Source: Mytilus edulis
Taxonomy: Eukaryota
DNA length: 64,000 nucleotides
Direction of reading: 5' to 3'
NCBI RefSeq assembly: GCF_963676685.1
Contig: NC_092344.1
Location: 49,662,001 to 49,726,000 of the forward strand
The position numbers were made by a program, and so were the translations under genes. Under the pieces are notes generated by a model. That model saw nothing but the letters and a program-made list of their open reading frames with translations, was not told where the DNA came from and made no database searches. This document shows positions 2,910-63,125 of the stretch, piece after piece. Each line of letters opens with the position of its first letter. Position 1 is the stretch's first letter.

Positions 2910-3294
2910 ACTGTACAAGTCTCTGGCCATTACCAAGATTAATATAAAATGCATTAATTTGAGAACATTAACAATAGTTTAAAACAATACTTTTATAACA
3001 CGTACATGTTTTATGACGTAATGGAAACTATGTCAATTGTAGGAGGAAACAAAATGTGTCATTGACCTTGCGAATATTTCTTTATATTTACATATATTGC
3101 AATTCCTTAGTACAACACAGTGTGACATTTAAAAGTGCACCTATAATCTACAAATTCATCATTTGCGGTTAACTTAGAATTTTCCTTGTGTACATATGTA
3201 TTATAAACAATATAATTGAAAACGGGATAAAAGAACGATTCGGAAGAAGTAAAACATTATTCATTAGAAATAATTCCAATTGTTCAAAACAGAG
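2910..3294 (+). promoter_or_regulatory. Promoter and non-coding exon 1 of family copy 1
   Basis: Motif series conserved among paralogs: TGACGTAA, AGGAGGAAAC, TTGACC, TGCGGTT (3164-3170), TTCCTTG. The TATA position reads GATAAAAG (3226-3233). Donor AG|GTAAGA at 3294/3295. Confidence 0.65.
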
Positions 3295-3906
3295 GTAAGA
3301 AATTATTAAAGCAGAATCATAACTATTTGGTATACATAAATATGAAAGATATTACAATTTAAATAAGTACCATAGTAACAAAGATAAGAAATAAGTTATT
3401 AAAGATTTAGAAAATTGTATTGATAAAGTTTTAAGCGTGATGCATGGTTCAATATTTTGGTTTTGATCTCAGTAATTTAAATTTAGATTCAGTAACACAA
3501 TACTGCTTCAAAATATAATTTATTTTCATAACTTATATTTATTGTGTTTTAAAATCAATCAGAAAGTTAATTCGGAATGAAATAATTATTGGAGACATTC
3601 AAGTTATTAATCACTCGAAGTAATGTTTGTTTCTTATGTTTAAATACTGTAAAGGTATATGTTTATCTTATACTTATACTTGACAATCAATGCAAATTAT
3701 TCAAGTTCCTTTTTTCTGCATTTGTAACTTTGTGAATAAACATCCTATGTATCTTTTTAATTTGTAATGTGAACCTAATTTCTCTGTAAAATCATATTGC
3801 ATTTATAAATTGAAGCTTTATTTCCACACTTTACATAATTCGTATTAAATTATTTGAACTCCTATTTTGTAAGTAAGGATATTTTCCCTCTAAATTTCAG
3901 ACTTGA

Positions 3907-4942
3907 ATGATGACATTCCAGACCATTTTCGTTTTGATGGCAATGGTCACAATAACAGCAGCCGGTAAGAAAAATGTTCAATGTGTTTTAGTCGAAATTT
4001 ATAAACTGTATCAAATAAAAGTGTTTTAATTGTATAGATAACATTTAAAAAATAACACAGAAAGTTCTGATATTTCCGAAACCGAACAGTCTCTGCAATT
4101 GCTTACAACAACGTTCTTTTGCTAAAAGTGTGTAATTGTTTTATTAGCGATAATACTTGATATTATTGTATTGTTAAATAAAAATAATCCCTAGTATTTT
4201 TTCCAATTAATCAATTCATGAAAATCACATAAAGTGTCAGATCTTTAATTTTACAGTATATGTACCCTCGGATAAGCATGCATTAGATAGACATGGAATG
4301 GAGAAGGTTTTACTGGTCGAAAACACAGTTGGAAGAAACATAAACAGGCGTCGTGGTGATGGATCTCTTTCTGTACTGGATGTTATTGATGCAAATAGAC
4401 GAGCAGGATCAAGAGGAGTTGGGACATCTCATGGAATAGGCAGTGAATTTATTACACACGGGTCATCTTCCGGTAGAGGATTGTCCGGGGCTTTTGTTGG
4501 TGGCAGGACCTCTGTATCTGGAAGTATTAGAGGCTCTTCAGTTGGTTTGTCCCGTGCTTTATCTGACGATGATGATCATTTCACCTCTGGCATCCGAATT
4601 GGTGCATCTGGTCTAGTTAGAAATGTGGATCTGTCTAGAAATTCTCATTTGGAAACTATTGGTAATATCCGTGGAGTGTCTGGTCATTCAGGTGCAGATA
4701 TTATTGACGCAATCAGTTCTAGACGAGGTGGGCGTGTTGTCCTGGACACTGTTTCTGCCAGACGAAGTGGATCAGCCCGTACTTCTGGTTCAAGACTAGT
4801 TTCTCAGTCAGTGGTAGGAGGAAAAACTGATTGCAAAAACGACTGTTTTAGTGATGGAGATTGTCCAACAAACAGATACTGTGCCACTGTTAATTGTCAC
4901 AGAATTTGTAGAAGAAGACTGTCTAATGGATACTCACCATGA
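3907..4942 (+). CDS. Secreted Gly/Ser/Arg-rich protein with C-terminal six-Cys WAP-like domain, copy 1 (short type, 247 aa)
   Basis: Coding exons 3907-3964 (MMTFQTIFVLMAMVTITAA signal peptide, phase-1 donor GTAAGA) and 4257-4942 (acceptor TTTTACAG), in frame with ORF 4298-4942. AATAAA at 4988-4993. Confidence 0.9.
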
Positions 4943-5544
4943 AAAGCCGAAATCCAGAGTATGAACACTTTTTGATATCTTTTTTTAAATAAAATATTGT
5001 TTTTTGTTATTGTATAGATATTTCGGTATTTCATCAATAATATTGATAAGTCATTCGTCAAATCAAACTAATCAGAAAAAATATAACAACACACAGAAAT
5101 CAATACAGATATAAATAAAGATAACAAAAATCTTACAGCAATTGGAAAAAGGACTGGTGATTTGTTTAAATTACAGTAACCCGTAACTCACAAAAAACAT
5201 AAAATAAACAATAATTAAAAAACTGTTTTCGCCAAAGAAAAGACAATTCCTTGTTAAGCATGTTAAGTTCAACATTGATTTGAATTCTAAAATAGCTACA
5301 AAAGAATTTCAGATTTATGATGCTGGAAACGTTCTGATAGCTAGACAAAAACGGAAAACTAACGATTTTCTTTTCAAAAACCGATTAAGCGAAATATATT
5401 AGCATAGAAATATTTGCTGATACAAAGACGTATACATTGAACCTGAATTATAACATAAAGGTATTAGGATATTTTTTAATTTCGAAAACTGTTTACCTCG
5501 GGAAATAATATGTTTATTTGTTAATTGTTATATGTATACATTGT

Positions 5545-5770
5545 TGCGCCGGTTCCAAGTCAGGAGGCTCTGGCCTCTGTTAAAAAAGATACATCTATTA
5601 TCACTGAACTAGTATGCATATTTGTTTACGGGTCAGCTGAAGAAAGGCTCCGGAAGCGGGAGTTTCTTGCTGCATTGACGACCTATTGGTGGACTCCAGC
5701 TGTTGTCTGCTCGATGGTGTGGTAGTTGTCTCTTTGACACATTCACCATTTCCATTCTCAATTTTATTTA
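5545..5770 (-). mobile_element. Interspersed repeat copy, inverted relative to the copy at ~6620-6990
   Basis: GTTGTCTCTTTGACACATTCACCATTTCCATTCTCAATTTT is the reverse complement of AAAATTGAGAATGGAAAGAGGAATGTGTCAAAGAGACAAC at ~6624. Superfamily not determined. Confidence 0.55.
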
Positions 5771-6557: not shown

Positions 6558-6619
6558 TATATGGTTAAACCTAACAAAAAAACTTTGATTTCATTGTGGC
6601 TAGTCTGTTAATCAGACAT

Positions 6620-10693: not shown

Positions 10694-12004
10694 TCATGAT
10701 GAGTATCCATTTGACAGTCTTCTTCTACAAATTCTGTGACAATTGACAGTGGCACAGTATCTGTTTGTTGGACAATCTCCATCACTAAAACAGTCGCTTT
10801 TGCAATCAGTTTTTCCTCCTACCACTGACTGAGAAACGAATCCTGAACCTGAAGTACGACCTGATCCACTACGTCTGGTCGAAACGGTGTCTAAAACAAC
10901 ACGCCCACCTCGTCCAGAGCTGATTGCGTCAAGAATATCTGTACCTGTATGACCAGACACTCCACGGCTACTACCAATAGTTTCCAAATGAGAATTTCTG
11001 GACAGATCCACATTTCTAGCCAGACCAGATGAACCAATTCGGCTACCAGACGTGAAATGATCATCATCGCCAGATAAAGCACGGGACAAACCAATTGAAG
11101 AACCTCTTATGATTCCAGATACAGAGGTCTTGCCTCCAACAGAAGCCCCAGACAATCCTCTACCGGAAGATGACCCGTGTGTTATAAATTCACTGCCTAT
11201 TCCACGAGCTGTGCCAACATTTCTTGATCCTGCTCGTCTATTTGCATCAATGATATCCAGTACAGAAAGAGATCCCTCACCACGACGCCTGTTTATGTTT
11301 CTTTCAACTGTGTTTTCAACCAGCAAAACCTTTTTAACTCCATGTCTGTCTAATGCATGTTTGTCTGTGGGTGCGTAGACTGTAAAATAAATATTTGACG
11401 TGTTATATTTCACAAATCTAGTAATACAGAACAATAAAAATTAACTCTTGTTTATATGTAAATATAAGGTTTCTGGCATTTTAACCAATGATATAACTAT
11501 CAACTAAAGATGAAATGACTAGAATGTTATCAATAGTTATCAAAGGTACCAGGATTGTAATTTAGTACGCCAGATGCGCGTTTCGTCTACACAAGACTCA
11601 TCAGTGACGCTCATATCAAAATATTGATAAAATCAAACAAGTACAAAGTTCAAGAGCATCAACTTAAGGGAACGTACGGCTTCAGCACAGATGTAGGTTC
11701 ATACCGTATAGTAAGCTATAAAAGACCTCATATGACAAATGTGAACCAATTCAAAAAGAGAAAACCTTTTGTGAAATGTTCTTGTAAAATATTCAAAAAT
11801 ATGTAGATCTTGTTAAGTATTGAAATTATATCTTTTTAAGGATTTTTTTTATTGTAATCATTTAGATATTTGTATCTTCACACCCGAACCACTTCTGTTA
11901 AAATAGTCTACAAACTCACAGGAAGCGATTAGAATATTTTACATACCGGCTAGTGTTACTGTTGTCAATGCAATCAAAAAGAAAATGGCCTGGAATCGCA
12001 TCAT
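10694..12004 (-). CDS. Secreted Gly/Ser/Arg-rich WAP-like protein, copy 2 (short type, 247 aa)
   Basis: Coding exons 12004-11947 (MMRFQAIFFLIALTTVTLA, donor GTATGT) and 11379-10694. Non-coding exon 1 donor at 12415. TATAAAAG at 12477-12484 on the minus strand. Confidence 0.9.
11567..11610 (-). ncRNA. Minimal type I hammerhead ribozyme motif in a retrozyme/Penelope-like repeat (~11532-11660), sense within intron 2 of copy 2
   Basis: Minus strand reads GCGTCA CTGATGA GTCT TGTGT AGAC GAAA CGCGCA TC TGGCGT. Core intact; stem III has a C.A mismatch. Confidence 0.7.
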
Positions 12005-12820
12005 TTTCTGAAATTCTGAAAAACAACAGGATTAATATTATTTGTTACTTGAATCATTATTTATATGTCTCTTGATTTTCAATTGTTTCTAATATTCAAA
12101 TAAAGAAAGAAATGTTGAGCAAAGTTAACACACGTTTCATCTACCATTCTTAATTAATTTATCAACGATGTTTCTTTCTTACATTTTCTTCATTTGCTTT
12201 TTATCACAGAAATTACATTTTTAAACATACATCAAATGTAATTAGAATTGAATCATGTGTACCTTATAGTATGTTTAACTTTATTTATGCCTTTTTCTAT
12301 TTCATCAAATGAATGAACTTTTTCTTGTTGATCTTTGTCAAAATAGCATAATTGTTGCTTTGTATCTTTATCATTCTTATTTATAATATATATGTATGTA
12401 TAAAATATGTCTTACCTTTGTTTAAAGCAATTGAAATGATTTGTAATGAATATTGTTGTACTGCTTCAGAATCGTTCTTTTATACCGTTTCAAATATGTT
12501 TTTTAATAGTTGACATACACACAAGGAAATTTGTAAATAAACCGCAAATGATGAATTTGTTAATTATGGTTCAAACTTTAATGTCACCTGCATTCTTCTA
12601 TGCAGTTTTGGATTATGATTATTTATAAAAACAACCGTACACAGGGTCATTTCGTTTTCTTCCTACTACTAAACACATTTGTCATTATGTCATGAAGTTA
12701 TTACGAAATATTATTCTGGCTTATCAACAACATGGTTGAATTTCTTAATTTCGTTGTAATCAGAGACTTGTACTGTTTAAAAACTAACAGAACTCCTTGT
12801 ACTACCTCATGGTATGGATA

Positions 12821-16749: not shown

Positions 16750-17136
16750 AACTGTACAAGTCTCTGGCTACTACCAAAATTAATATAAAATGCATTAATT
16801 TGAGAACATTAACAATAGTTTAAAACAATACTTTTATTACACGTACATGTTTAATGACGTAATGGAAACTATGTCGATTGTAGGAGGAAACAAAATGTGT
16901 TATTGACCCTGATAACATTTCTTTTCATTTACATATATTGCAATTCCTTAGTACTACGACAGTGTGACATTTAAAAGTGCACCTATAATCTACAAATTCA
17001 TCATTTGCGGTTAACTTAGAATTTTCCTTGTGTACATGTGTATTATAAACAATATAATTAAAAACGGTATAAAAGAACGATTCGGAAGAAGTAAAACATT
17101 ATTCATTAGAAATAATTCCAATTGTTCAAAACAGAG
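16750..17136 (+). promoter_or_regulatory. Promoter and non-coding exon 1 of copy 3
   Basis: TGACGTAA 16855-16862, GTAGGAGGAAAC 16880-16891, TTGACC 16903-16908, TGCGGTT 17006-17012, TTCCTTG 17024-17030, TATAAAAG 17068-17075, donor GTAAGA after 17136. Confidence 0.7.
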
Positions 17137-17747: not shown

Positions 17748-18786
17748 ATGATGACATTCCAGACCATTTTCGTTTTGATGGCAATGGTCACAGTAACAGC
17801 AGCCGGTAAGAGAAATGTTCAATGTGTTTTAGTCGAAATTTATAAACTGTATCAAATAAAAGTGTTTTAATTGTACAGATAACATTTAAAAAAATAACAC
17901 AGAATGTTCTGATATTTCCGAAACCGAACAGTCTCTGCAATTGCTTACAACAACGTTCTTTTGCTAAAAGTGTGTAGTTGTTTTATTAACGATAATACTG
18001 GATATTATTGTATTGTTAAATAAAAATAATCCCTAGTATTTTTTTTCCAATTAATAAATTCATGAAAATCACATAAAGTGTCAGATGTTTAATTTTACAG
18101 TATATGTACCCTCGGATAAGCATGCATTAGATATACATGGAGTGGAGAAGGTTTTACTGGTCGAAAACACAGTTGGAAGAAACATAAACAGGCGTCGTGG
18201 TGAGGGATCTCTTTCTGTACTGGATGTCATTGATGCAAATAGACGAGCAGGATCAAGAGGAGTTGGAACATCTCATGGAATAGGCAGTGAATTTATTTCA
18301 CACGGGTCATCTTCCGGTAGAGGATTGTCTGGGTCTTCTGTTGGAGACAGGAACTCTGTATCTGGAATCATTAGAGGCTCTTCAACTGGTTTGTCTCGTG
18401 GTTTATCTGACGACGATGATCATTTCACCTCTGGCAGCCGAATTGGTTCATCTGGTCTAGTTAGAAATGTTGATCTGTCTAGAAATTCTCATTTGGAAAC
18501 TATTGGTAGTGGCCGTGGAGTGTCTGGTCATTCAGGTGCAGATATTCTTGACGCAATCAGTTCTGGACGAGGTGGGCGTGTTGTACTAGACACTGTTTCG
18601 TCCAGACGTAGTGGATCAGGTCGTACTTCTGGTTCAAGACTAGTTTCTCAGTCAGTGGTAGGAGGAAAAACTAATTGCAAAAACGACTGTTTTAGTGATG
18701 GAGATTGTCCAACAAACAGATACTGTGCCACTGTTAATTGTCACAGAATTTGTAGAAGAAGACTGTCAAATGGATACTCACCATGA
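17748..18786 (+). CDS. Secreted Gly/Ser/Arg-rich WAP-like protein, copy 3 (short type, 247 aa)
   Basis: Coding exons 17748-17805 (MMTFQTIFVLMAMVTVTAA) and 18101-18786; canonical GT-AG and an intact ORF. Confidence 0.9.
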
Positions 18787-22897: not shown

Positions 22898-24002
22898 TCA
22901 TCCTGTGTATCCTTTAGACGGTCTCCTTCTACAAATCATGTGACAATTAACAGTGGCACAGTATTTGCTCGTTGGACAATCGCCGTCACTAAAACAGTCT
23001 TTTTTGCAATCAGTTTTTCCTCCTAGTACTGACTGAAAAACGACTCCTGAACCAGAAGTACGACCTGATCCACTGCGTCTGGAATCAACATTATCTAGTC
23101 CAACTCGTCCGGAGCTGATTGCATCAAGAATATCAGAACCTGAATGACCAGACACTCCACGGCCACTATCTATGGTTTCCAAACGAGAACTGCGAGAGAG
23201 ATCAAAATTTCTAGCCAGACCAGATGTACCAATTCTGCTACCAGATGATATATGACCATCATTACTTGAAACACTGGTCAATCCAGATGATGAACTTCTA
23301 GAAGAAATGTCGACACAGTAACTGCTACAGCCATCATGTACACATTTATGTCCTGAACGACATAACTTGTCATCTCCACACCCATAATGACAATTACTGA
23401 TACTGTCATCGTCAGATAAAGCACGAGAGAAACCAGCTTGAGAGCCTCTTGATACAGAGACCCTTCCTCCAACAGAACCACCAGACAATCCTATACTAGC
23501 TGAAGAACCATGTGATAAAAATTCATTGCCTATTCCATGAGATGTTCCACCTGCTCTTGACCCTGTTCGTCTATTTGCATCAATGACGTCCAATACAGAA
23601 AGAGATCCACCACCACGACGGCCGTTTATGTTTCTTCCAACTATGTTTTCGACAAGCAAAACCTTTTCCACTCCATGTCTATCTAATGCATGTTTTTCCG
23701 TTGGTGCATAGACTGTAATATAAATATCTGACATTTTATATAACTTTCACAAATCAAGTAATACAAAAACTATGAAAATTAAAAATATGTTGATGTAAGT
23801 AAATCACCTTCTTCAGGACTGAAATTATACCTTTTTGATGATTTGTTATAGTAAGGCATTTATATTTTTGTATATTAACACCCTAAACACTTCTGTTAAA
23901 ACAGTTTGTAAACTTGCAGAAAGCAAATTGAATAGTTTACTTACCGGCGACTGTTATTGTGGACAATGCCATCAAAAAGAAAAAGGTCTGGAATATCATC
24001 AT
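22898..24002 (-). CDS. Secreted Gly/Ser/Arg-rich protein with two six-Cys WAP-like domains, copy 4 (long type, 290 aa)
   Basis: Coding exons 24002-23945 (MMIFQTFFFLMALSTITVA) and 23712-22898. Internal domain CHYGCGDDKLCRSGHKCVHDGCSSYC plus the terminal domain. TATA at ~24420-24427. Confidence 0.9.
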
Positions 24003-27000: not shown

Positions 27001-27010
27001 TGAAAGATAA

Positions 27011-50029: not shown

Positions 50030-51085
50030 TCATGGTGTGTATCCTTTAGACAGTCTTCTTCTACAAATACTGTGACAATTAACAGTGGCACAGTATCTGT
50101 TTGTTGGACAATCCGCATCACTAAAACAATCGTTTTTGCAATCAGTTTTTCCTCCTACCACTGACTGAGAAACGAGCCCTAAACCTGAATTACGAGCTGA
50201 TCCACGACGTCTGGAAGAAACTGTGTCTAGTACAACACGCCCACCTCGTCCAGAACTGATTGCGTCAAGAATATCTGCACCTGTATGACCAGACATTCCA
50301 CGGCCACTACCAATAGTTTCCAAATGAGAATTTCTGGACAGATCCACATTTCTAGCCAGACCAGATGAACCAATTCGGCTGCCAGAGGTGAAATTATCAT
50401 CATCGTCAGATAAAGCACGGGACAAACCAATTGAAGAACCTCTAATGATTCCAGATACAGAGGACCTGCCTCCAACAGAAGACAATCCTCTACCGGAAGA
50501 TGACCCGTGTGTAATAAATTCACTGCCGCCTATTCCATGAGATGTTCTAACTCCTCTTGATCCTGCTCATCTATTTGCATCAATAACATCCAGTACAGAA
50601 AGAGATTCCTCACCACGACGTCTGTTTATGTTCCTTCCAACTGTGTTTTCGACCAGTAAAACCTTCTCCACTCCATGTCTATCTAATGCATGCTTATCCG
50701 AGGGTGCATATACTGTAAATATTGAATATCTGACAATTAACTTGATTTTCATGAATTGATTAATTTGGAATAAAAATACTAGTGAATTATTTTTTATTTT
50801 ACAATAAAATGATATCAGGCATTATCGACAATAAAACAACTACACACTATAAGCAAAGGAACGATGTTGTTAGCTATTGCAGAGACTGTTCGATTTCGAA
50901 TATATCAGCTGTTTTAAAGAACATTCTGTGGTAGGACATTCAAATGTTATCTACACACTGAAAACACTTTTATTTGATACAGTTTATAAATTTAATTCGG
51001 GAAAAACACATTGAACATTTTTCTTACCGGCTACTGTTATTGTGGTCAATGCGATCAACACGAAAATGGTCTGGAATCTCATCAT
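50030..51085 (-). pseudogene. Family copy 7 (short type) with one premature stop
   Basis: Exons 51085-51028 and 50712-50030 have intact splice sites. CGA>TGA at 50567-50569; otherwise in frame (one 6-nt deletion relative to copy 6). Confidence 0.85.
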
Positions 51086-54000
51086 TTCTAAGTCTGAAAT
51101 TTAGAGGAAACATATCCTTACTTACAAAATAGAAGTTCAAGTAATTTAATAGGAATTATGTAAATAGTGAAAATAAAGTTTCAATCTATCAATGCAATAT
51201 GATTTTACAAAGAAATTAGGTTCACATTACAATTTAGAAAGATAGGATGTATATTCACGGATTAACAAATGCAGAAAAAAGATCTTTCATAACTTACATT
51301 GATTGTCAAGTATAAGTATAAGATATACATTTACCTTTACAGTATTAAAACTTAAGAAAAAAACATTACTTCGAATGATTAATAACTTGAATATCGCAAA
51401 TAATCATTTCATTCCGAATTAAACTTCCGATGGATTTAAAAACACAGTAAACATCAGTACTTATACTTTAAAGTAGTATGTTGCTACTGTATTTTTATTT
51501 TAATTACTAAAATCAACACTAAAATGTTAAACAGTGCACAACGCTTTAAACTTTTTAAATCCATTTTTCTAAACCTTTAACGACTTATTTCTATCTTTGT
51601 TACTATGGCATTTAATATAATTGTTCATAACTGCTTTAATAATTTCTTACCTTTGTTTGGAACAATTCGAATTATTGCTAATGAATAATGTTTTACTGCC
51701 TACAAATCGTTCTTTTATACCGTTTTCAATTATATGTTGTTTATAATACACATGAACACAAGGAAGGTTTATGTTTAACCGCAAATGATGAATTGGTTGA
51801 TTAGTTGCACTTTCAAATGTCACACTGACGTAGTACTAAGGAACTTCAATATATGTCTATATACAAAAATGTTCTCAGGGTCAATGACACATTTTGGTTC
51901 CTCCTACAATCGACACAGTTTTCGTTACGTCATAATACATGTACTTGTTATGAAATATTGTTTTGACCTATTATTAATGTTCTCATATACATTCATGGTA
52001 TATTTGGTAGTAACCAAAGACTTGTACAATATGAAAAAATAATAAACTGAAGTCTTTTATTTCCGTTTAGACGATAATATTAATTTCTGTCAATTGCTTG
52101 GAAAACCGCTGCGTAAAGGTTATCTAGCTGACGTTGGAAAACTCTTTTAAGTTTTGTTTTGAATTTTAAACTTATACGCAATACTAGCGATTTGTCTGCA
52201 TATGGTTTACTAGTATCAAATACACAGGGCTCAGTCAAATATAAGTTACAAATTTTATGAAAAAGAAAACTAAGAATTCCAAAAAAAGTTGAGTTAAATC
52301 TGGGCACCGTCAGTTTTGTCTTGGGATAAAAGAAAATATGTCATGTTTCGTTGCCTGTCGAAATTTTGTATTGAATGTAAAAATTCAGACAATTATCTTT
52401 CTCTTAACTCAGTTTTGAGATTAAAAAAAAACTTGTTCTTTCGTTCCGTATTAATATTTTGTGTTAATTTTTTTTAGGGGGACAAAACGTCTCTGAAGCC
52501 CCTTATCCCATAGCAAAATCAAAATCTCATACACATCAAACGGTATATTACTGACATGGTACAAGCATTTTCTTATGCAGAAAATGGTGGATTAAAACTT
52601 GTTGCATAGTTAGCTAAACCTTTCACTTGTATGACAATTACATCAAATTTCATTATATTGACAACGATGTGTGAACAAAACAAAGAAACATAATAGGTAA
52701 AATGTCAGAAAAAGGGGTACAGCAATACAGAATTGTGTCATTATCTTTATCATTGTAGAAACAAGCAAATATGTAACATAGAAGCACAAAACGTGATATA
52801 GACAGAGCCCATTAGCAAAAATGAAAGACAAGAAAACAAAAATTTACAAAAGCACAATTACGGGATGTATAAGTAAAGATTGACGCAGAGGTCGAAATAA
52901 GCGCTAGCCCCAATTTGCGTCTGACCAGTAGAGTTTGTCAGCTTGTGGTCCGGCGAACCAGTATAAGTCTGTCGATGAAAATATCTGATTGCATGGCAAT
53001 CTCGTTTGGTTTTCGAAATCGATAACGGCGTACCGGGGTACTCAGTATTACAATTGATCAAGTTAATTAATATCTCGGTTGGGCGTCCTTCACAATACAA
53101 AATGTGGAAACTTTTGGAATGATTTAAATCGCCGGACAATAAAAAATAAGTGACATTCAAAAGGAAGTTCAGAAATAAGTTGATAAAATTGACCAAATAT
53201 AATGTAAATATCAAAAAACCTTTGGAAAAGATCTCGAATGGTTAAATCATATAGTCGATCGCAATGCAATGAATAGATAAGAAATGTATTTTTGTAACGG
53301 TATCCTCAAATCTTAAGTCAGATTCTGTACATGTCATGAACAATCAAAACAGCACAAACAAATCTACGGGAATAAAGGAGAGAAAAGCACAATTTGAAAG
53401 AAAAGCAAAGTTTATTATAGAACAAGAAAAAGTACAGAGCCACGTCATATGTATCAAAGTAACACAAAAAGGCATATAGACCAAACACATTAGCAACAAA
53501 GAAAGACAAGAATTTAAAAATTATAATAGAACAATAACACGATGCCGAGATGTTCAAGTACAGAGCCACGTCATAAGTATTACAAAAACTAAAAAAAAAA
53601 GGCATATAGACAAAGCACATAAGCAAAAATAAGACAATTATATACAACTTATCACAAAAAGTACAACAACGTATAACACAATGACGGAATGTATAAGATA
53701 TGAGTCACGTCAAATGGATATCAACAAAAACAGACTAAACAGTTCAAAAGTTATCATTTGATGTTTTATCTGGACATCTGTATGAATATTATATACCATG
53801 TCTGAAAAAAAATCAATATTTACATAATCTTTAACATGCCTGTATATAAATTAAGATATCATAATATTATAAATAATAAGGTTTCAATTCCCTTAGATAT
53901 TTTGACCAAAAATGGATTTTACTATTATTTTATGTCCTTTTTTGTAATGAAAGTCATCAACTGTTGCGATTTATATACCTTCCTGGTGTAAAATATTTGG

Positions 54001-56657
54001 CTTTGAGCGTACATGAGAAAGGCAATCGAGAAAAGCGTTTGAAAGCATACAATTTATAAAGCAATAATTACATATTTTTGAAAATGTCAACAAATTTTCG
54101 ACGTTTCAATAGATAGCCAGACAAGATAAAGAATGGATAATGGTCACTCTTAAAAAATAGGTCCTTCAAATAAAGTTATGTATGTATTGTTGTTAAGATC
54201 GATAGCTGTTAAATGTATCATGATGTAACCACGATATATTAATATATAGACAGAATCTGCCCCTGCAAACCGTACAAGAAACCAACGTTAAATAGAATCA
54301 AAGAATCCGTCAGTTTATTTTTCGACTTATGATTGTGAATGTCCCTTTAAATAGAAGTAAACAATTGAAAAAATCCTTAAGGGAGAGCGACAAAATCATG
54401 ACATGACAAATGAAAATCGATGAAAAGACAAACAGTAGTCCATAAATTTAGGAAAAGAATTAGAAGTGAGAGGATATTATCAAGGTAGTTAAAGGTAGTT
54501 CTTGTATCTTTACAGTTTTCTTGAGAAGCTACTGTTTGGGGTCTGCCTCATATGAATGAAGAAAAAAACGCCAAGTCAGAAGAAAATTTGGCTTCCATTC
54601 GATTGACAAACACATATTAAAAAGGGTAGATGGCAATTATTTTGAAAACGCCAAAGATATATAAAATAGAAAATAACCAAAATGAAAAAAATCCTTTTAT
54701 AGGAAGATGTTAAACCTGTACATAGTCTTTGGTTTACAATAACACTACCAAGAATTTAAATAAAACTATCACACCATTACATTGTTTACCTACCTTTATA
54801 CATATTGATTTAAAACTTCTGATGAAGTAACATTGATAAATGGAATTCACTATAAATCTTTTGTTCAACAGTTTTGTGTATTCCATAATTGTTAGCCTAA
54901 GTTCTTTCTTTCTAATCAGTGTTAAACAGACAGTGTGCATACTAAAGATGTATAAGGTGGTTTAAACAGTTATTTGTAGTACCAAAAAAGAAAATTGAAC
55001 CAGGTCTAAAGTAATTTCATAATCGATGATATATAATATAGAGATACATGAGAAATATAATAGATATTTATTATTTCAAATCGGAGTTTATTTAGGAGTT
55101 TTTATATTTTAACTATTTTTAGTTTCATTTTCTTATATAACTTATATTTGTTTGTATTTTTCTTATATTAAAAAAAAATGTCAATGATCTTTCAATACAT
55201 GCAAGAGTAAAAATAGAATCAAGTGCAAGCAGTTTTTGTGTCATAATTTATTTTATTTTTCATCTACTCAGATTAGTTAAAGTAGTTTTCACCCGAGGTA
55301 TGACGGGTTTTGTGCTGCAATTTGTATAGTTTTCTAGGTTTTGTTTTGTATACTGTTGTCCTTTCGGTGTTTTTTTTTAAATTTTTGCCGCGATGCCGTT
55401 GCGTATTTTTCTCTCTCTGGAGATAAAAATAAAACATAAAAAGAAGTGACCATTCTATCAAGTAACCAAAAGTTATCCAACAGCCAAAAGATATTGGGAA
55501 ATTAAACTAATTTAAGAGTTGATTTATATGTAGATTATATATAAACAATACTTATGAGAATTAATGTTTTGTAACTTAGAGCCTAACACTGTGATAATAA
55601 TTCCTTTTCAATTTTAAGATTGACGATAATAATCTTAATGTAATTTGACCATTGATGACGGAGTAAGAAGAGATGATATACAAAATATATGCGAATTGAT
55701 TTTTTAAAATAATTCAACAGTTTGGTTTTTAATGAGGATGGTTCTCGTCCTTTTTGTAAGCATATGTTCAAGCTTTGTAAAATCAGATACGTCTTTATAA
55801 TTGTTTTGTTTCCAACAACATTTGAACAAAATGTCAGGCAGTGGTTTTCAAGTTATTTCAATTAAACGAAAAAAAAACCACGTCCAAACCATGAGGTTAT
55901 ACAATGCGTTCGGTTAATTTATAAACAGTACAAGTCTTTGATTACAACTAAATTATTAACATGAATATTTAACCATATTATAAGTAAGTGAGAATGATAT
56001 TTCGTAATAACTACATGTAGTATGACATAATGACAAATGTGTTTGTTGTAGGGATAAAACCAAATGACCCTGAGCACACTTTCTTTAAATAAGCATAATC
56101 CAAAACTACACAAAATATGACAGAGTGACATTTAAAAGTTAAAAACAATAATTAATTCATCATTTGCGGTTCAGTTACACACTTCCTTGTGTGTATGTCA
56201 ATTAAAAGAAAAATTACCAAAACGGTATAAAAGAACGATTCTGATGCAATATTTATCATATACTTTTCCGACTGCTTTGAACAAAGGTAAGAAATTATTT
56301 AAACAAACGTAAATCTTATAAAAATAGCATAGATAAACAAAACATTAATTATGCAACTTTGACAACCATAATCAAGAAATAGTTCTTTGAAGAAAAAGAA
56401 AAGCTTAAATAAAGTTTCACATACTAAAAGGTATGAATTATCCAATACTTATTAAAATTTCTGAATGGTAAAACATGGTATTAAAGTGGCAGCAAAGCAA
56501 ACATAGAAGTTGTAAGAAAGAATCATTCTTCAGTAGCTTAATTAAGAATGGTTTATCAAAAAGTGTGCACAGCAATTGAAAATCAAGAGACACATACACA
56601 TCTTTATTCCAGTAACATATAATATTAATACTGTGGGTTTTTTCAGAATTTCTAAAG

Positions 56658-58610
56658 ATGATGAGATTCCAGACCTTTTTCTTTTTGATGGCATTGACCA
56701 CCATGACAGTAGCCGGTAAGTAATTAGTTATCAAAAGTACCAGGATTATAATTTTATACGCCAGACGCGCGTTTCGTCTACATAAGACTCATCAGTGACG
56801 CTCAGATCAAAATAGTTAAAAAGCCAAACAAATACAAAGTTAAAGAGCATTGAGGACCCAAAATTCCAAAAAGTTGTGCCAAACACGGCTAAGGTAATCT
56901 ACTCCTGGGGTAAGAAAATCCTTAGTTTTTCGAATAATTCAAAGTTTTGTAAACAGAAAATTTATAAAAATGACCATGTAATTGATATTCATGTCAACAC
57001 CGAAGTGTTGACTACTGGGCTGGTGATACCCTCGGGGACGAAACGTCCACCAGCAGTGGCAACTATTCAATTTGCTTTCTTCAAGTTTAACAGAAGTGTT
57101 TTGGGTTTTATTATACAAAAATCTAAATGCCTTACTATCAAAAAATTTAAAAAATATAATTTCAATACTTATTATTTTATCATTTGTATATTCTTGAAAA
57201 AAATTTAACACAAAGTTTTCTGTTTTGAATTGAATCAGATTTGTCATGTGGAGTCTTTCAATACGGTATGGCCTGGATCCGTACGTTCACTGCAGTTGTT
57301 AACGTCCTATGCATTTCATCTATAGCAAATAGCTATCTAATTGGCAAACATATAAGATATCCTTACATTTATAAGAGAGACGAAAGATACCAGAGGGAGA
57401 GTCAAACTCATAGGTTGAAAATAAACTGACAACGCCATGGCTAAAAATAAACAGACAAATAATAGTAAAGAAGACACAAAATAGAAAACTAAAGACTAAG
57501 CAACGCGAACCCAACCAATAACTAGTGGTGATCTCGGGTGCTCCGAAAGGGTAAGCAGATCCTGCTTCATATATGGCACCTGTCGTGTTGCTTAAGTCAT
57601 TATAAATTCGGTAACTAGTCTAATTCGGTATGTCACATTCGTGAAAAGGGAAAGGTATTGTAGTTACGACATAAGGAACATATCCGATATCATCTGTGAA
57701 ACTTACATATACACAAGAGCGAACTTTTATTGTTTTTATATTACTAGAATTCTGAAAGTTATATAAAATGTCAGATCTTCATTTTACAGTTTATGCACCA
57801 ACTGAAAAACATGCATTAGATAAACATGGAGTTGAAAAGGTTTTACTGGTCGAGAACTCAGTTGGAAGAAACATCAACAGGCGTCGTGGTGGCGAATCTC
57901 TTTCTTTACTGGATGTCATTGATGCAAGTAGACGAACAGGATCAAGAGCTGGAGCTGTTGGTACATCTCATGGAATAGGAAATGAATTTCTAACACACGG
58001 GTCATCAACCAGTATAGGATTGTCTGGTGGTTCTCTTGGAAGTAGGACCTCTGTATCAAGAGACTCTTTAGCTGGTTTGTCTCGTGCTTTATCTGACGAT
58101 GACAGTATCAGTAATTGTCATTATGGGTGTGGAGATGACAAGTTGTGTCGTTCAGGACATAAATGTGTACATGATGGTTGTAGCAGTTACTGCGTTGACA
58201 TTTCTTCTAGAAGTTCATCATCTGGATTGACCAGAGTTTCAAGTAATGATGGTCATATATCATCTGGCAGCAGAATTGGTACATCTGGTCTGGCTAGAAA
58301 TTTTGATCTCTCTCGCAGTTCTCGTTTGGAATCTATTGGTAGTGGCCGTGGAGTGTCTGGCCATTCAGGTTCTGATATTCTTGACGCAATCAGCTCTAGA
58401 CGAGTTGGACTAGACACAGTTTCTGTCAGACGTAGTGGATTAGGTCGTATTTCTGGTTCGGGACTCGTTTCGCAGTCTGTGGTAGGAGGAAAAACAGATT
58501 GCAAAAATGACTGTTTTAGTGATGGAGATTGTCCAACGAGCAAATACTGTGCATCTGTGAATTGTCACATGATTTGTAGAAGAAGACCGTCTAATGGATA
58601 CACAGGATAA
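56658..58610 (+). CDS. Secreted Gly/Ser/Arg-rich protein with two six-Cys WAP-like domains, copy 8 (long type, 292 aa)
   Basis: Coding exons 56658-56715 (MMRFQTFFFLMALTTMTVA) and 57790-58610. Intron 2 is enlarged by repeat insertions. TATAAAAG at ~56226. Confidence 0.9.
56723..57060 (-). mobile_element. ~340-bp hammerhead-containing repeat (retrozyme/Penelope-like) inserted 7 bp after the exon-2 donor of copy 8
   Basis: Absent in paralog copy 4, where GTAAGTA|AACTATTC is contiguous. Same family at ~7838, 11532, 32238, 60575 and 60800. Confidence 0.75.
56758..56801 (-). ncRNA. Intact minimal type I hammerhead ribozyme
   Basis: Minus strand reads GCGTCA CTGATGA GTCT TATGT AGAC GAAA C GCGC G TC TGGCGT: full core, 4-bp stem II, palindromic GCGC loop III, GUC cleavage triplet, and stem I CGTCA/TGGCG. 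Confidence 0.85.
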
Positions 58611-60144
58611 AAAACCTATCACCGAAATCCAGACTTTGAAATCTTATTTATATCTTTTATACAATAAAATTTTGCAATCAGTTTGTGTTAACTGTGAGAA
58701 TTTTTCGTATAACATCACAAAATGTCGATAATTCAGGCTTAAAAGCAAGCGTTTTAGTAATGAGAAAATTTTAAAACATACAAATATACACAGAGAAACG
58801 AAGAAACGATAATAAAACACATATACAATAATTGACAACACAATATTTTCAGACAAAAATTGTCCGTTGAACCCTCCTTGTCAAACTTACTGCTTATATA
58901 ACAATGTTTAGAATGCCGATAATATGCCTACGTGGCAGGAATAAAGTACAAACAAACGTAAGAAACACCGGTACAGAGAAATACTTAAATATATTTTATG
59001 ATAACACATTACAAGTTGTAAACCGCAGATTACCAACGGACAATTTCCACGAATTAACGACAAAAAACAGTTATGAAAGAATGTAGAGCAATAATTGCAA
59101 TCTTTTTATCTCCCAGTTGATTCGACATAACAGGGCCTGCAGCATCCCATCGGGATTCCTTTGCTAGATATTTGCTGCTTACATAATCTACTTAAAAGCT
59201 TATAAACAAAGAGTTTCCATTGGTGAAATCGCAGTTATCCCTTTGATAATTTAACGGACGTACCACGATTTGGTTACTTGTAATGTAATTCCAATTCACA
59301 GACTACGGCGGATAATTTTAATTGCTTTAACCATAATCTCATACACTTTCTCCAGATTTTGACGTATCAAACTTTTTATAACTTAGAAGAGTTTTTTAAG
59401 AAACAAATATCCAGCAACATTTTCTTAACAATTCTAAAGACAAATCATTATCGTGTTTCAAAATCAACTAAGGCTTTTCTAAACAAAGATAACTTAATAT
59501 TGGCCAAATTTGAAGCCACTTTTTTTTAATTTCATTGTTCAATGTCCTTAAATTTGTTATTGATTTGCTCTCCGTGACACCAGTGAATCTATTACAGACA
59601 AAAGCAAGTTTTGTGTATACAATTAAATTACAAACGTAAAGTGAATAGAATTTCAAAGCAGAAGTTTTTTTAAATAGTTATAAGAAAAAAATCCCATAGT
59701 CTATAAGAAAAATAAAAGACATCAGTTTTTCCTTCAAATAATACAAGTCTCCGGCTTCTACCAAATATGTTAATATCAAACTTTACAAATCGGTCACAAC
59801 AACATTTCGTAATACATGCATATATTATGATGTCGTTTAATGTTTGTCTGTTGTAGGAGGAAACAGCATGTGTTATTGATCCCTTGTACTTTTCTTAAGA
59901 TATGCATAATCTGTAATTTTGAAGTAAACAAACATCGTGGCATTTAACATTTTCAACTATAACTAACGAATTCGTCAATTGCGGTTCAGTTAAAATTTCT
60001 TTGTGTGTATGTCAGTTATAAACAAAATAATTGAAAAAGGGTATAAAAGAACGAGTCTGAAGAACAAAACATTATTCATAAGTATTAGTTTCAATTGCTT
60101 CAAACAAAAGTAAGAAATGTAGTTATATAATATACATAATATAA

Positions 60145-60405: not shown

Positions 60406-60571
60406 TAAGCCATTAAAGAATTTGAGAAAGGATCAATAAAAAAAATAGGGTACAAATGACTCAACACTCTTTAAAAAATGTCTTTATATTTAAAAATGAT
60501 ATTACAGTTAAAGAACATTTAAGAACCAGTTACGGCTGGTAAAAAAGAAACATTATAAAACGATGTTATAA

Positions 60572-60908
60572 AGTTATCAAAGGTACAAGGCTTATACATG
60601 GCATTTAGTACACCACAAGCGTGTTTCGTCTACATAAGACTCATCAGTGACGAGCAGATCAAAATAGTTAGAGAGCTAAACAAGTACAAAGATGAAGTAC
60701 ATTGATGACCCAGTATAGAATTTTATATTAAAACTTGTGCATTGAGCAACTAAACTTTATTAATTCAAATAATGTAAAGGTGAGAGACACACATAATAGT
60801 TATCAAAAGTACCAGGATTATAATCTAGTACGCCAGCACCGCGTTTCGTCCACATAAGACTCATCAGTGACGCTCATATCAAAATATTTATAAAGACAAA
60901 CAAGTACC
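60572..60908 (-). mobile_element. Two tandem degenerate hammerhead-repeat fragments
   Basis: Both retain TTTCGTC.ACATAAGACTCATCAGTGACG (~60624-60652 and ~60844-60872), but the stem III/cleavage sites are mutated. Confidence 0.7.
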
Positions 60909-61791
60909 AATAACTGTATGTTCAAATAAAATAACTACTTCGAAATATAATGCATTACCATAACATTCTTTTGTTTTGTTCTAATATATATATGTAAGTG
61001 AAAACCTAACTGACATAATTGTTTGAAATATTGAAGATACTAATGAGTATATGCATTGCTTAAAGACCATTCATGCCATTGGAATACTATGTTTTATTGA
61101 TAAAAAAAAATATGAAATTTCAAATCATGTAAAAAATGCTATTTTCCTTCAATGCCCTGTTCGTTATTTGTTAATTCTTGTATTAACTTCTATCATATCT
61201 TTCTGATGTCTTATTGCCATACAATCTCTCTGAAATATGATTTTTGTATAATTATTTCTTGATTAATTTATTTCATACCTTGGGCGGATTAGGCAAATCT
61301 TTTTGAATTTAAAACATATTTACCCCATCACAGAATAAAAGTGTATTGCAGAAATGCGCATTTGGAGTAGTAGTGGGTCCGTTTATGTTACTATTAATGA
61401 GTTTATCGTTTATTATATATATTTGCAGATACCCCTATAAAGTTTCAAAATTTATCTACTTTCGTTATTTATTATTTATTTCTTTAATAATGTTTTTTGT
61501 GAATAGAATCCTTACATAAAATATAAATTGTACACAACTTGAAGCCCGGAAACTAGCGCAATAAAACCTAACCTTTAGCATCGATTGAAGAAATTCTGTC
61601 ATTTCGTTATATACAATAACCAATAATATTCGCATCAATGATTGTGTCCTATATGTAACTGTCTTGTAGGTCTATAACAAAAACAAGCTATGTGTTGATG
61701 CTCACTATTAGTGCGAGTCCTGTGCCGATCCCAGTTTGATATGATTTTGTAAAACATATTTTTTTTGATGTGTATGTTAGAATTGTTAGAG

Positions 61792-63125
61792 ATGATGATA
61801 CGCCAGTCATTTTTCTTTTCGTTGGCATTGGTCACAGTGACACTAGCCGGTAAGAGAAATATTCGATGATTTCTCTAGATTTAAAAGCTATTTTTTATAA
61901 TGTGTTTTCGTTGTTGAGATAAAAAAAAAAACACCTTTTCAAAATCTTAACAAACGGTATAATGTCATTTCATACGAAGGTATCTTACCAACAACTTCAT
62001 ATTTTGGTAGAAGGAAAAATTTGAAAGAATGGTTTGCTGGTTCATATATTTTTTTGCAATGTTGAATCCTTTATAGCTTGCAAAACGGTATGAGTTTTAT
62101 ACAGTGCTAAATCCATACGGTCCCTGTTATATAATAGATAATTGTCTTATTTGCAAATATACCATAACTCATTAAATCAGTTTATAGATTAAGGATAATG
62201 TATATTTGAGAAGATAAAATGTCAGATATATTTTTTTACAGTCTATGCACCCACAGAAAAACATGCATTTGGAGTGGAGAAGGTTTTACTGGTCGAAAGC
62301 AAAGTTGAAAGAAACATAAACAGGCGTCGTGGTGGTGGATCCGTTTCTGTACTTGATGTTATTGATGCACAGACGAGCAGGATCAAGAGGAGTTTGGAAC
62401 ATCTCATGGAATAGACAGTGAATTTATTACACACGGGTCATCTTCCGGTAGAGGACTGTCTGGGGTTACTGTTGGAGGCAGGACCTCTATATCAGGAACT
62501 ATTAGAGGCCTTTCAGCTGTTTTGTCTCGTGCTTTATCTGACGATGACAGTAGCAGTAACTGTCATTATGGGTGTGGAGGCGACAGATTATGTAGTTCAG
62601 GACATAAATGTTGACCTGAGGGTGGTAGCAGTTACTGCGTCGACATTTCATCTGGAAATATAATTGGTGCATCTAGATTGGCAGACTCTATTAGAAGGGT
62701 AAACACGGGGTCAGAAATGATTAGAAGGTCATTATCTGGCTTGACCAGAGTTTAAAGTAATGATGGTCATTTATCATCTGGCAGCAGAATCGGTACATCT
62801 GACTTGGCTAGAAATGTTGATCTCTCTCGCAGTTCTTATTTGGAAACTATAGGCAGTGGCTGTGGAGTTTCTGGTCATTCAGGTTCTGATATTCTTGACG
62901 CAATCAGCTCTGGACCAGTTGAAATAGATACAGTTTCTTTCAGACGTAGTGGATCAGGTCGTACTTCTGGTTCAAGACTCGTTTCTCATTCAGTATTAGG
63001 AGGAAAAACTGATTGTAAAAAAAGACTGTTTTAGTGATGGAGATTGTCCAACGAATAAATACTGTGTTTTTGTTAATTGTCACATGATTTGCAGAAGAAG
63101 ACCGTCTAATGGATATACAGGATAA
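61792..63125 (+). pseudogene. Family copy 9 (divergent long type), frameshifted
   Basis: Signal exon 61792-61849 (MMIRQSFFFSLALVTVTLA) and exon 3 from 62242. Frameshifts at ~62368, ~62395 and in the A-run at ~63020. Both Cys domains remain recognisable. TATA 60042-60049, exon-1 donor 60110. Confidence 0.85.

What the first reader, a model, noticed from the sequence alone, without database searches (positions are those of the whole stretch)
3226..63125. Nine-copy cluster of a secreted Gly/Ser/Arg-rich protein family capped by WAP-like domains
Seen: nine paralogs share one exon plan (UTR exon, 58-nt signal exon, one large exon). The mature chain is a conserved ~30-aa N-terminal segment (VYxPxxKHALDRHGVEKVLLVEN), then RRR, a G/S/R-dominated body and a Cys domain with a basic tail. 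The ORF track misses the signal exon, so these look like anonymous low-complexity ORFs. Known analogies: abalone lustrin A (GS-rich and basic regions, C-terminal WAP; shell matrix) and type II crustins (Gly-rich plus WAP; antimicrobial). I do not recognise this exact family. Inference: a lineage-expanded, high-dosage secreted system, either structural (shell, periostracum, byssus, mucus) or host-defence.
Basis: partly seen in the sequence, partly recalled or inferred. Interest (0 to 1): 0.9.

Follow-up and report, generated by a model that had tools for sequence, protein, structure and literature searches.

The report
Mussel secreted mini-WAP protein gene array
The window holds nine tandem copies (seven intact) of a mussel-only gene for a secreted, floppy Ser/Gly/Arg-rich protein ending in a cut-down three-disulfide WAP knot; public genome annotation already lists these genes, but nobody has studied them, and their tissue and function are still unknown.

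Summary
The window is Mytilus edulis chromosome DNA (G000:C1:49,662,001-49,726,000). It carries nine copies of a three-exon gene: a TATA box with a 5'UTR exon, a signal-peptide exon with 58 coding nt, and one large exon.

- **Intact and broken copies:** seven copies are intact. Copy 7 has one premature TGA, and copy 9 has frameshifts and stops.
- **Predicted protein:** about 23-28 kDa, pI 9-10, 42-46% Ser+Gly+Arg. AlphaFold2 predicts disorder except for a confident C-terminal 26-residue six-Cys knot.
- **The knot is WAP-derived:** Pfam WAP is its only hit (16-20 bits, cut-off 20.8). The top structural matches are omwaprin, SLPI and elafin. A paralogue at the end of the same array has a full 8-Cys WAP.
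- **What the knot has lost:** it lacks C1, C6 and the protease-binding loop.
- **Family extent:** the window is the middle third of a single ~211-kb array of about 19 genes with 1, 2, 3 or more knots. The one-knot short type arose once, inside the M. edulis species complex.
- **Prior knowledge:** RefSeq and UniProt already annotate the genes as uncharacterized or WAP domain-containing. I found no paper on them.

The scan's own earlier notes, on this window and on one copy 34.6 kb beyond it, had already flagged the knot.

Best guess (inference): a secreted extracellular material or coating protein. Host defence is the main rival.

The parts
3226..3294 (+). Copy 1: TATA box (GATAAAAG, 3226-3233) plus 5'UTR exon, donor AG|GTAAG at 3294/3295
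3907..3964 (+). Copy 1: signal-peptide coding part of exon 2 (exon starts about 3901)
4257..4942 (+). Copy 1: exon 3, 227 codons plus stop; six-Cys knot at 4832-4909; AATAAA about 45 nt after the stop
12416..12483 (-). Copy 2: TATA plus 5'UTR exon (long-type-like 5' half; chimera)
11947..12004 (-). Copy 2: signal-peptide coding exon
10694..11379 (-). Copy 2: exon 3, short type, intact; knot at 10727-10804
17069..17136 (+). Copy 3: TATA plus 5'UTR exon
17748..17805 (+). Copy 3: signal-peptide coding exon
18101..18786 (+). Copy 3: exon 3, short type, intact; knot at 18676-18753
24367..24426 (-). Copy 4: TATA plus 5'UTR exon
23945..24002 (-). Copy 4: signal-peptide coding exon
22898..23712 (-). 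Copy 4: exon 3, long type, intact (matches RefSeq XP_071167870); internal knot at 23315-23392, C-terminal knot at 22931-23008
29426..29487 (+). Copy 5: TATA plus 5'UTR exon
30124..30181 (+). Copy 5: signal-peptide coding exon
30494..31173 (+). Copy 5: exon 3, short type, intact (matches RefSeq XP_071124331); knot at 31063-31140
42242..42309 (-). Copy 6: TATA plus 5'UTR exon
41581..41638 (-). Copy 6: signal-peptide coding exon
40581..41269 (-). Copy 6: exon 3, short type, intact; knot at 40614-40691
51651..51718 (-). Copy 7: TATA plus 5'UTR exon
51028..51085 (-). Copy 7: signal-peptide coding exon
50030..50712 (-). Copy 7: exon 3, short type, with a premature TGA at 50567-50569 where the other short copies read CGA; otherwise open; knot at 50063-50140
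56226..56286 (+). Copy 8: TATA plus 5'UTR exon (placed by alignment; start approximate)
56658..56715 (+). Copy 8: signal-peptide coding exon; intron 2 is 1074 nt
57790..58610 (+). Copy 8: exon 3, long type, intact (identical to P0028 after trimming); internal knot at 58116-58193, C-terminal knot at 58500-58577
60043..60109 (+). Copy 9: TATA plus 5'UTR exon
61792..61849 (+). Copy 9: signal-peptide coding exon (diverged)
62242..63125 (+). Copy 9: exon 3 of a long-type pseudogene, with a deletion in the N-terminal motif, at least two frameshifts and several stops

Best explanation
**What it is (well supported).** This is the central part of one ~211-kb tandem array in Mytilus edulis. The array encodes a mussel-restricted family of secreted proteins. 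Each protein has:
- a 19-residue leader;
- a strongly conserved ~30-residue N-terminal segment;
- a ~170-220-residue intrinsically disordered, cationic Ser/Gly/Arg-rich chain. This chain carries 3-4 copies of a short acidic-hydrophobic motif (L/I-D/E-V/A/T-I/V, followed a few residues later by R or RR);
- a C-terminal 26-residue three-disulfide 'mini-WAP' knot, followed by a basic stretch and an invariant Tyr near the end.

The knot descends from a canonical 8-Cys WAP domain. It lost the N-terminal C1 segment and one Cys of the CC pair.

The array grew by duplication, unequal exchange (copy 2 is a chimera) and stepwise loss of knots. It runs from a canonical-WAP-headed multi-knot gene at one end, through three-knot and two-knot genes, to the one-knot short type, which arose once in the M. 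edulis species complex.

**How it works (inference).**
- The knot lacks the WAP protease-binding loop, so it is probably a stable cap or binding module and not an inhibitor.
- The disordered sticker-and-spacer chain, with an invariant Tyr two residues from the mature N-terminus and three from the C-terminus, fits a secreted extracellular material or coating protein of byssus, periostracum or shell matrix, or mucus.
- Such a protein could associate or cross-link through its ends.
- Compact TATA-driven genes in many copies would serve bulk output.
For: **Gene structure**
- Nine units share the exon plan, the splice sites and a promoter block with TATAAAAG and TTTGCGGTT.
- The exon plan stands out as conserved islands. 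Against long-type copies, only the promoter with exon 1, exon 2 and exon 3 align.
- Database models from independent annotations show the same junction.

**Selection**
- Purifying selection: pairwise dN/dS is 0.23-0.68.
- The N-terminal 30 residues are the most constrained part (pN/pS 0.18), and the knot gives 0.33.

**Structure**
- AlphaFold2 gives pLDDT below 50 for the body.
- The C-terminal knot scores 85-88 and has a beta-hairpin.
- The internal knot of the long type has the same hairpin at pLDDT 60-68.

**WAP descent**
- Pfam WAP is the only credible hit (16.3-19.8 bits, profile positions 10-39 of 41).
- The three-knot relative P0051 passes the cut-off at 27.3 bits.
- The same-array paralogue P0086 has a full WAP (positions 1-41 of 41, 41 bits).
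- An alignment shows the knot equals that WAP minus the C1 segment and one Cys of the CC pair.
- The Foldseek top ranks are omwaprin, SLPI and elafin (rmsd 1.2-1.8 Å over 27-33 columns).
- VIA-align's four best of 48,161 chains are SLPI, elafin, omwaprin and nawaprin.

**Family extent and history**
- The whole family lies at C1:49.649-49.860 Mb.
- The short-type clade has 100/99 support and contains M. edulis-complex sequences only.

**Motifs**
- The acidic-hydrophobic motif occurs 3-4 times per protein against 0.05 expected from composition shuffles.
- Y21, P23 and Y243 are invariant in 22 sequences, and the C-terminal Tyr is invariant in distant relatives too.

**Lead for a material role**
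- In the green mussel Perna viridis, two proteins with only a WAP-profile annotation are foot-specific and highly expressed, and WAP domains are amplified in that genome (PMC7971044).
- I could not test whether those two proteins are homologous to this family.
Against: - There is no expression, tissue or proteomic evidence for any copy.
- No tryptic peptide or accession of the family appears in the searchable literature.
- Tyr content is low (3-5 per protein), unlike DOPA-rich mussel foot proteins.
- The composition is cationic and the knot is WAP-derived, which fits an antimicrobial role equally well.
- The database searched held no run-derived (Logan) protein close to the short or long types. 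Fragments shorter than the length window would have been missed.
- The structural matches are individually weak (E 0.15 or higher, Z 3.6 or lower), because the domain is tiny.
Confidence: 0.45

Rival explanations
1. Host-defence effector. The cationic chain plus the WAP-derived knot would act as a crustin- or waprin-like antimicrobial or microbe-binding protein of haemocytes or mucosal epithelia. The tandem array would supply sequence diversity.
For: - pI is 9-10, and a basic stretch follows the knot.
- The best structural matches include the antibacterial waprins omwaprin and nawaprin.
- The family is a tandem array with pseudogenes, chimeras and species-specific duplicates. That is a pattern known for mussel antimicrobial gene families (own knowledge).
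Against: - Selection is purifying, with no sign of diversifying change in the knot (pN/pS 0.33).
- A ~200-residue disordered Ser/Gly-rich chain is atypical for mussel antimicrobial peptides (own knowledge).
- The family is absent from the mussel antimicrobial-peptide literature reachable here.
- No 8-Cys WAP is present.
Confidence: 0.25
2. Polyprotein precursor. Prohormone-convertase-type cleavage at the RR/RRR sites would release several short peptides (the L-D-x-I-containing segments) and a C-terminal knot peptide of about 50 residues.
For: - Several conserved segments are bracketed by RR.
- Three-knot relatives carry an extra tandem 11-residue unit between RR pairs.
- RR pairs are modestly enriched: 5-7 observed against 2-3.3 expected, P 0.004-0.11.
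- R67, R186 and R187 are invariant.
Against: - The RRR after the N-terminal segment is not conserved across the family.
- Distant relatives keep the L-D motif but often have a single basic residue after it.
- The sites lack the P4 Arg of furin sites, and no Gly-Lys/Arg-Arg amidation signature is present (read directly from the sequence).
- The enrichment is weak in an Arg-rich chain.
Confidence: 0.08
3. Serine-protease inhibitor of the elafin/SLPI kind, protecting a secreted material or tissue from proteolysis.
For: - Descent from WAP.
- UniProt's automatic label 'WAP domain-containing protein' for the orthologues.
- Protease inhibitors are abundant among foot-specific transcripts in Perna viridis (PMC7971044).
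Against: - The segment from C1 to C2 is missing.
- The C2-C3 spacing is 3 residues, against 8 in elafin. The loop that carries P1-P1' in elafin and SLPI is therefore not there (loop position from own knowledge of entry 1FLE and SLPI).
Confidence: 0.07

Closest known systems
WAP 'four-disulfide core' domains (Pfam PF00095: elafin, SLPI, omwaprin, nawaprin)
   Same: The knot shares:
- the C-x-x-D-x-D-C-P core;
- a beta-hairpin;
- the spacing of C3-C4-C5 and C7-C8.

WAP is the best Pfam hit and the best fold hit. A canonical WAP sits in a paralogue in the same array.
   Different: - Six Cys, not eight: C1 and C6 are absent.
- There is no protease-binding loop.
- The scores of the window's copies fall below Pfam's cut-off.
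- The knot is 26 residues long, against about 45 for a WAP domain.
Type II crustins (crustacean antimicrobial proteins)
   Same: Both have a leader, then a low-complexity Gly-rich region, then a C-terminal WAP-type knot, and both are cationic.
   Different: - Crustins have 12 conserved Cys (4 plus a full 8-Cys WAP).
- Their Gly-rich region is much shorter.
- No sequence homology was found outside the knot.
Lustrin A (abalone nacre matrix protein)
   Same: Both have a Gly/Ser-rich elastic domain, a basic region and a C-terminal WAP-like domain in a secreted molluscan protein (own knowledge; also cited in PMC5854119).
   Different: - Lustrin A is large, with about ten Cys-rich and Pro-rich modules; none are present here.
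- The body here is Arg-rich and carries conserved short motifs.
- No homology was detected.
Perna viridis foot-specific proteins with only a WAP-profile annotation (pvir_s00884g60, pvir_s00544g11)
   Same: These are mytilid proteins recognised only by the WAP profile, with no Swiss-Prot match. They are highly expressed and foot-specific, and WAP domains are amplified in that genome (PMC7971044).
Shematrins (pearl-oyster shell framework proteins)
   Same: Both are secreted, Gly-rich and low-complexity, and form a multi-copy family. Both have a conserved basic C-terminal tail ending in or near Tyr (own knowledge).
   Different: - Shematrins have no Cys knot.
- Their repeats are different.
- No homology was detected.

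Membership tests
WAP four-disulfide core (PF00095) | Eight Cys in the C1...C8 arrangement, including the adjacent C5-C6 pair | tested here: not met
   All knots have six Cys with invariant spacing C-x3-C-x5-C-x5-C-x4-C-x3-C. Aligned to canonical WAPs of the same lineage, C1 and one Cys of the CC pair are absent.
WAP four-disulfide core (PF00095) | Pfam score at or above the gathering cut-off (20.8 bits) | tested here: not met
   The window's copies score 16.3, 17.0 and 19.8 bits over profile positions 10-39 of 41. The cut-off is met by the relatives P0051 (27.3 bits, three knots summed) and P0086 (41.3 bits, canonical domain).
WAP four-disulfide core (PF00095) | WAP fold | tested here: inconclusive
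   - The knot is modelled at pLDDT 85-88.
- The Foldseek top seven are almost all WAP domains, but E is 0.15-1.4.
- The VIA-align top four are WAP domains, with Z 2.4-3.6.
- The ranking is consistent, but the scores are too low to stand alone.
WAP four-disulfide core (PF00095) | Common descent with bona fide WAP domains | tested here: met
   The paralogue P0086, at the end of the same array, has a full WAP. Its C2-C8 part aligns with the knots with a single one-residue gap.
Elafin/SLPI-type protease inhibitors | Exposed binding loop around C2 carrying P1-P1' | tested here: not met
   The segment before C2 with C1 is absent. The C2-C3 spacing is 3 residues, against 8 in elafin. Inhibition itself cannot be tested with these tools.
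Type II crustin | Gly-rich region followed by 12 conserved Cys (4-Cys region plus complete WAP) | tested here: not met
   Short copies have 6 Cys and long copies have 12 Cys arranged as two six-Cys knots far apart.
Lustrin A-like | Alternating Cys-rich and Pro-rich modules before the GS domain | tested here: not met
   There are no such modules, and Pro is only 2-3 residues per protein.
Dibasic-processed polyprotein precursor | Repeated peptides bracketed by conserved dibasic sites | tested here: inconclusive
   - Two RR sites are invariant and one RRR site is not.
- RR enrichment is weak.
- Distant relatives often have a single basic residue at these places.
Secreted protein | Cleavable N-terminal signal peptide | tested here: inconclusive
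   The leader is 19 residues long, with a basic residue at position 3 in most copies, a hydrophobic core and T/V-x-A before the mature Val. AlphaFold2 models it as a helix over residues 4-20. No signal-peptide predictor was available.

The most novel reading that the evidence does not exclude
The invariant short motifs on the disordered chain (L-D-V and I-D-A in one segment, then L-E-T, L-D-A and L-D-T) match the consensus of the LDV-type integrin-recognition motifs of vertebrate fibronectin, MAdCAM-1 and the ICAMs (own knowledge). The family could therefore be a multivalent secreted integrin ligand. It would control haemocyte or epithelial cell adhesion, for example in wound plugging or in cell attachment to newly secreted shell or byssus material. 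The mini-WAP knot would serve as a matrix anchor.
Probability: 0.06. Interest if true: 0.8.

Novelty: new variant of a known kind. Interest (0 to 1): 0.5.

Why it matters
Mussels are models for wet adhesives, shell formation and invertebrate immunity. Yet here is a roughly 19-gene family under purifying selection that no study has touched.

- **A record of domain decay.** The array shows, within one locus, how a classical protease-inhibitor domain (WAP) was cut down to a 26-residue three-disulfide knot, multiplied, and then lost knot by knot in the youngest lineage.
- **A wider module.** The same six-Cys spacing also occurs in multi-repeat proteins of unidentified organisms (P0079, P0081). The mini-WAP may therefore deserve recognition as a module in its own right.
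- **A possible new material protein.** If the proteins turn out to be components of byssus, periostracum or mucus, the design would interest biomaterials work. That design is a disordered cationic chain with repeated stickers, a Tyr at each end and a knot cap.

All of this depends on expression data that could not be obtained here.

Tried and rejected
**RNA evidence**
- Splicing, tissue and expression level are therefore untested.

**Spliced proteins**
- I searched exon 3 by reference and read exon 2 separately.
- For full-length work I used the database's own proteins: P0002 for copy 5 and P0026 for copy 4.

**A fragment that looked like transcript proof**
- P0076 fuses the leader to the body. 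It turned out to be an older genome gene model, not a run-derived sequence.

**Literature**
- Six searches for tryptic peptides, UniProt, GenBank and LOC identifiers and the odd RefSeq name found nothing.
- Topic searches gave only general WAP and shell papers.
- The Perna viridis supplement lists expression values but no sequences.
- The M. edulis shell-proteome paper has no supplement held as text.

**Other searches**
- The ESM Atlas gave no usable hit for the whole protein or the knot.
- A word-indexed search with a profile of distant relatives was swamped by low-complexity candidates.
- A profile of the knots against PDB sequences gave only non-significant hits: carboxypeptidase A inhibitor, the Dumpy DPY module, elafin, nawaprin, Dickkopf and omwaprin.
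- Rfam at gathering thresholds found nothing in the window.
- The flank beyond the array (L002) showed nothing informative. L001 was fetched but not examined.

**Readings rejected**
- Membership of the crustins, lustrin A, perlwapin or the waprins was rejected on Cys count.
- The canonical protease-inhibitor reading was rejected because the binding loop is missing.

Full report
**Where the window comes from.** The window has no N and about 32% G+C. Exon 3 of copy 3 finds 67 proteins, all from Mytilus species: M. edulis, M. galloprovincialis, M. trossulus, M. californianus and M. coruscus. They are named 'uncharacterized', 'hypothetical' or, by UniProt's automatic rule, 'WAP domain-containing protein'.
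- P0002 (XP_071124331, M. edulis, 245 aa) equals the leader of copy 5 followed by copy 5's exon 3.
- P0026 (XP_071167870) does the same for copy 4.
- The contig length of these records (126,317,657) is that of G000:C1.
- The window is G000:C1:49,662,001-49,726,000.

**The observation.** blastn with copy 1's three exons finds nine units in alternating orientation.
- Every unit has 58 coding nt from ATG to a GCCG|GTA donor, a CAG acceptor, phase 1 and one large final exon.
- Intact copies have AATAAA 45-53 nt after the stop.
- All nine share a promoter block with an invariant TTTGCGGTT element, a TATAAAAG box (GATAAAAG in copy 1) and the exon 1 donor.
The true start is probably about 30 nt further on, which I did not verify.
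- Among short-type copies the whole unit aligns, introns included, at 83-93%. Against long-type copies only the promoter with exon 1, exon 2 and exon 3 align. This conservation pattern supports the exon plan.
- Copies 1-6 and 8 are open.
- Copy 7 has TGA where the other short copies read CGA.
- Copy 9 has a deletion in the N-terminal motif, frameshifts and stops.
- Copy 2 is a chimera. Its 5' half, from about 340 nt upstream into intron 2, aligns with the long types. Its exon 3 and 3' flank align with the short types.

**The protein.**
- The mature chains have 226-228 residues (short type) or 271-273 residues (long type).
- pI is 8.9-10.2. Composition is Ser 15-20%, Gly 14-16% and Arg 9-12%. 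Each chain has 3-5 Tyr and no Trp.
- Across 22 family members the invariant positions are not in the Ser/Gly spacers. They lie in:
  - the N-terminal Y-x-P;
  - a segment S-x-S-V-L-D-V-I-D-A-N-R-R-x-G;
  - L-E-T-I-G;
  - D-I-L-D;
  - L-D-T-x-S-x-R-R-x-G-S;
  - the knot;
  - the C-terminal R-R-x-x-S-x-G-Y.
- The four-residue core L/I-D/E-V/A/T-I/V occurs 3-4 times per protein, against 0.05 in composition shuffles. I defined the motif after seeing the data, so that contrast is illustrative only.
- RR pairs are mildly enriched.
- Pairwise dN/dS is 0.23-0.68. By region, the N-terminal 30 residues give pN/pS 0.18, the knot with its tail 0.33 and the body 0.49.
- AlphaFold2 with family alignments predicts a leader helix and a body below pLDDT 50. 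The C-terminal knot reaches pLDDT 85-88 with a beta-hairpin. In the long type, the internal knot forms the same hairpin at pLDDT 60-68.

**The knot is a cut-down WAP.**
- Every knot in 60 family proteins has the spacing C-x3-C-x5-C-x5-C-x4-C-x3-C, with one, two or three knots per protein.
- Pfam WAP is the only credible hit. It scores 16.3-19.8 bits against a cut-off of 20.8, over profile positions 10-39 of 41. The start of the domain, with C1, is therefore missing.
- The three-knot relative P0051 passes at 27.3 bits.
- Three relatives, P0072, P0080 and P0086, carry a complete WAP (positions 1-41 of 41) right after the leader, followed by six-Cys knots and the same C-terminal unit.
- Aligned with these canonical domains, the knot lacks the G-x-C-P start and the following loop. 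It also has one Cys where WAP has CC. The rest matches with a single one-residue gap, including C-K-x-E/D-C and D-x-D-C-P.
- Against elafin the match needs no gap, and C6 is replaced by Ala.
- Foldseek ranks omwaprin, half-SLPI and elafin first (E 0.15-1.4, rmsd 1.2-1.8 Å over 27-33 columns).
- An independent all-against-all aligner puts SLPI, elafin, omwaprin and nawaprin as its four best of 48,161 chains (Z 2.4-3.6).
- Each score is weak because the domain is tiny, but sequence, fold ranking and the same-locus paralogue all agree.
- In elafin and SLPI the protease-binding loop runs through C2, with P1 just after it (own knowledge). The C2-C3 spacing is 8 there and 3 here, and the C1 segment is gone. 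A canonical inhibitor function is therefore unlikely.

**The family and its history.** A six-frame search of the whole assembly places every match on C1 between 49,649,103 and 49,843,911. Outside the window's nine copies, that stretch holds:
- three more long-type copies;
- one more pseudogene;
- five three-knot copies.

The canonical-WAP-headed paralogue P0086 (RefSeq name 'mucin-21-like') lies at 49,858,671-49,860,122, just beyond the last three-knot copy. It has the same separate leader exon.

A maximum-likelihood tree of 47 sequences gives the following picture:
- It splits the three-knot clade from the one- and two-knot clade, each with 100/100 support. I left out fragments and models with extra N-terminal fusions.
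- M. californianus and M. coruscus contribute only two- and three-knot forms.
- The short type is one clade (100/99) of M. edulis, M. galloprovincialis and M. trossulus sequences. It is nested among their long types.
- The short type therefore arose once, by an in-frame loss of the internal knot, and then multiplied. Part of that multiplication is species-specific.

A profile search of 1.84 billion representatives finds only 17 proteins.
- Six unnamed ones from run and ENA assemblies (P0075, P0077, P0078, P0080, P0082, P0083) keep the C-terminal knot, the basic stretch, the G-Y tail and the L-E-T-I-G and L-D-T motifs. I could not identify their source organisms.
- Two others (P0079, P0081) are strings of nine or ten six-Cys knots with the same spacing. 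They score 58-59 bits on Pfam WAP. The mini-WAP is therefore not confined to mussels.

**What it does.** Nothing here measures function. I found no paper on the family.

My best inference (0.45) is a secreted extracellular material or coating protein. The reasons are:
- a long disordered chain with repeated short stickers;
- an invariant Tyr at each end;
- a stable knot that has lost the inhibitor loop;
- compact TATA-driven genes in many copies;
- in Perna viridis, foot-specific, highly expressed proteins annotated only by the WAP profile (PMC7971044). This is a lead and does not show homology.

Rivals:
- **Host defence (0.25).** It fits the charge, the waprin-like fold and the turbulent array. 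It is weakened by purifying selection and by the family's absence from the mussel antimicrobial-peptide literature.
- **Dibasic-processed precursor (0.08).** It is suggested by the conserved RR brackets but weakened by their loss in distant relatives.
- **Classical protease inhibitor (0.07).** It is weakened by the missing binding loop.

**Verdict.** The family is a new, unstudied variant within the WAP superfamily. Its genes are already present in public annotation under uninformative or wrong names ('probable GH family 25 lysozyme 3', 'hornerin-like', 'mucin-21-like'). The evolutionary picture is well supported. The mechanism remains inference until expression and proteomic data are examined.

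Noticed in passing
window 33146-34237 (-): A 363-aa open frame with BTB (partial), BACK and PHR domains lies between copies 5 and 6. It resembles BTBD1/2/3/6 (Pfam PHR 69 bits, BACK 43 bits, BTB 27 bits covering only profile positions 69-108). The start of the BTB domain must lie in another exon or be missing.
   Followed up: partly
window 320-1063 (-) and 14862-15266 (-): Two open frames share a long, nearly identical stretch and have no Pfam match. This is probably a dispersed repeat or mobile-element remnant between the gene copies.
   Followed up: no
window 38535-38923: A 23-bp minisatellite with 17 copies at 95% match. It produces spurious open frames in all three + frames. Two smaller arrays with 40-41-bp periods lie at 27146-27255 and 28338-28527.
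   Followed up: no
window 56716-57789 (intron 2 of copy 8): This intron is 1074 nt, against 232-567 nt in the other copies. Rfam at gathering thresholds found no RNA family anywhere in the window. That does not exclude a minimal motif.
   Followed up: partly
database records for copy 4 and for array members outside the window: RefSeq names for family members are artefacts of low-complexity similarity. They are 'probable GH family 25 lysozyme 3' (copy 4, XP_071167870), 'mucin-21-like' (XP_071157844) and 'hornerin-like' (M. californianus XP_052082407).
   Followed up: yes
P0079 and P0081 (unnamed; JGI/ENA/Logan assemblies): These proteins of about 500 aa consist of nine or ten six-Cys knots with exactly the mussel spacing. 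They come from unidentified organisms and score 58-59 bits on Pfam WAP over positions 9/10-40/41 only. The three-disulfide mini-WAP may be a wider, undescribed module.
   Followed up: partly
L002 8046-8606 (-), i.e. G000:C1 about 49,868,245-49,868,805: A 186-aa open frame with a dense Cys/Gly cluster lies about 8 kb beyond the end of the array. I did not examine it further.
   Followed up: no
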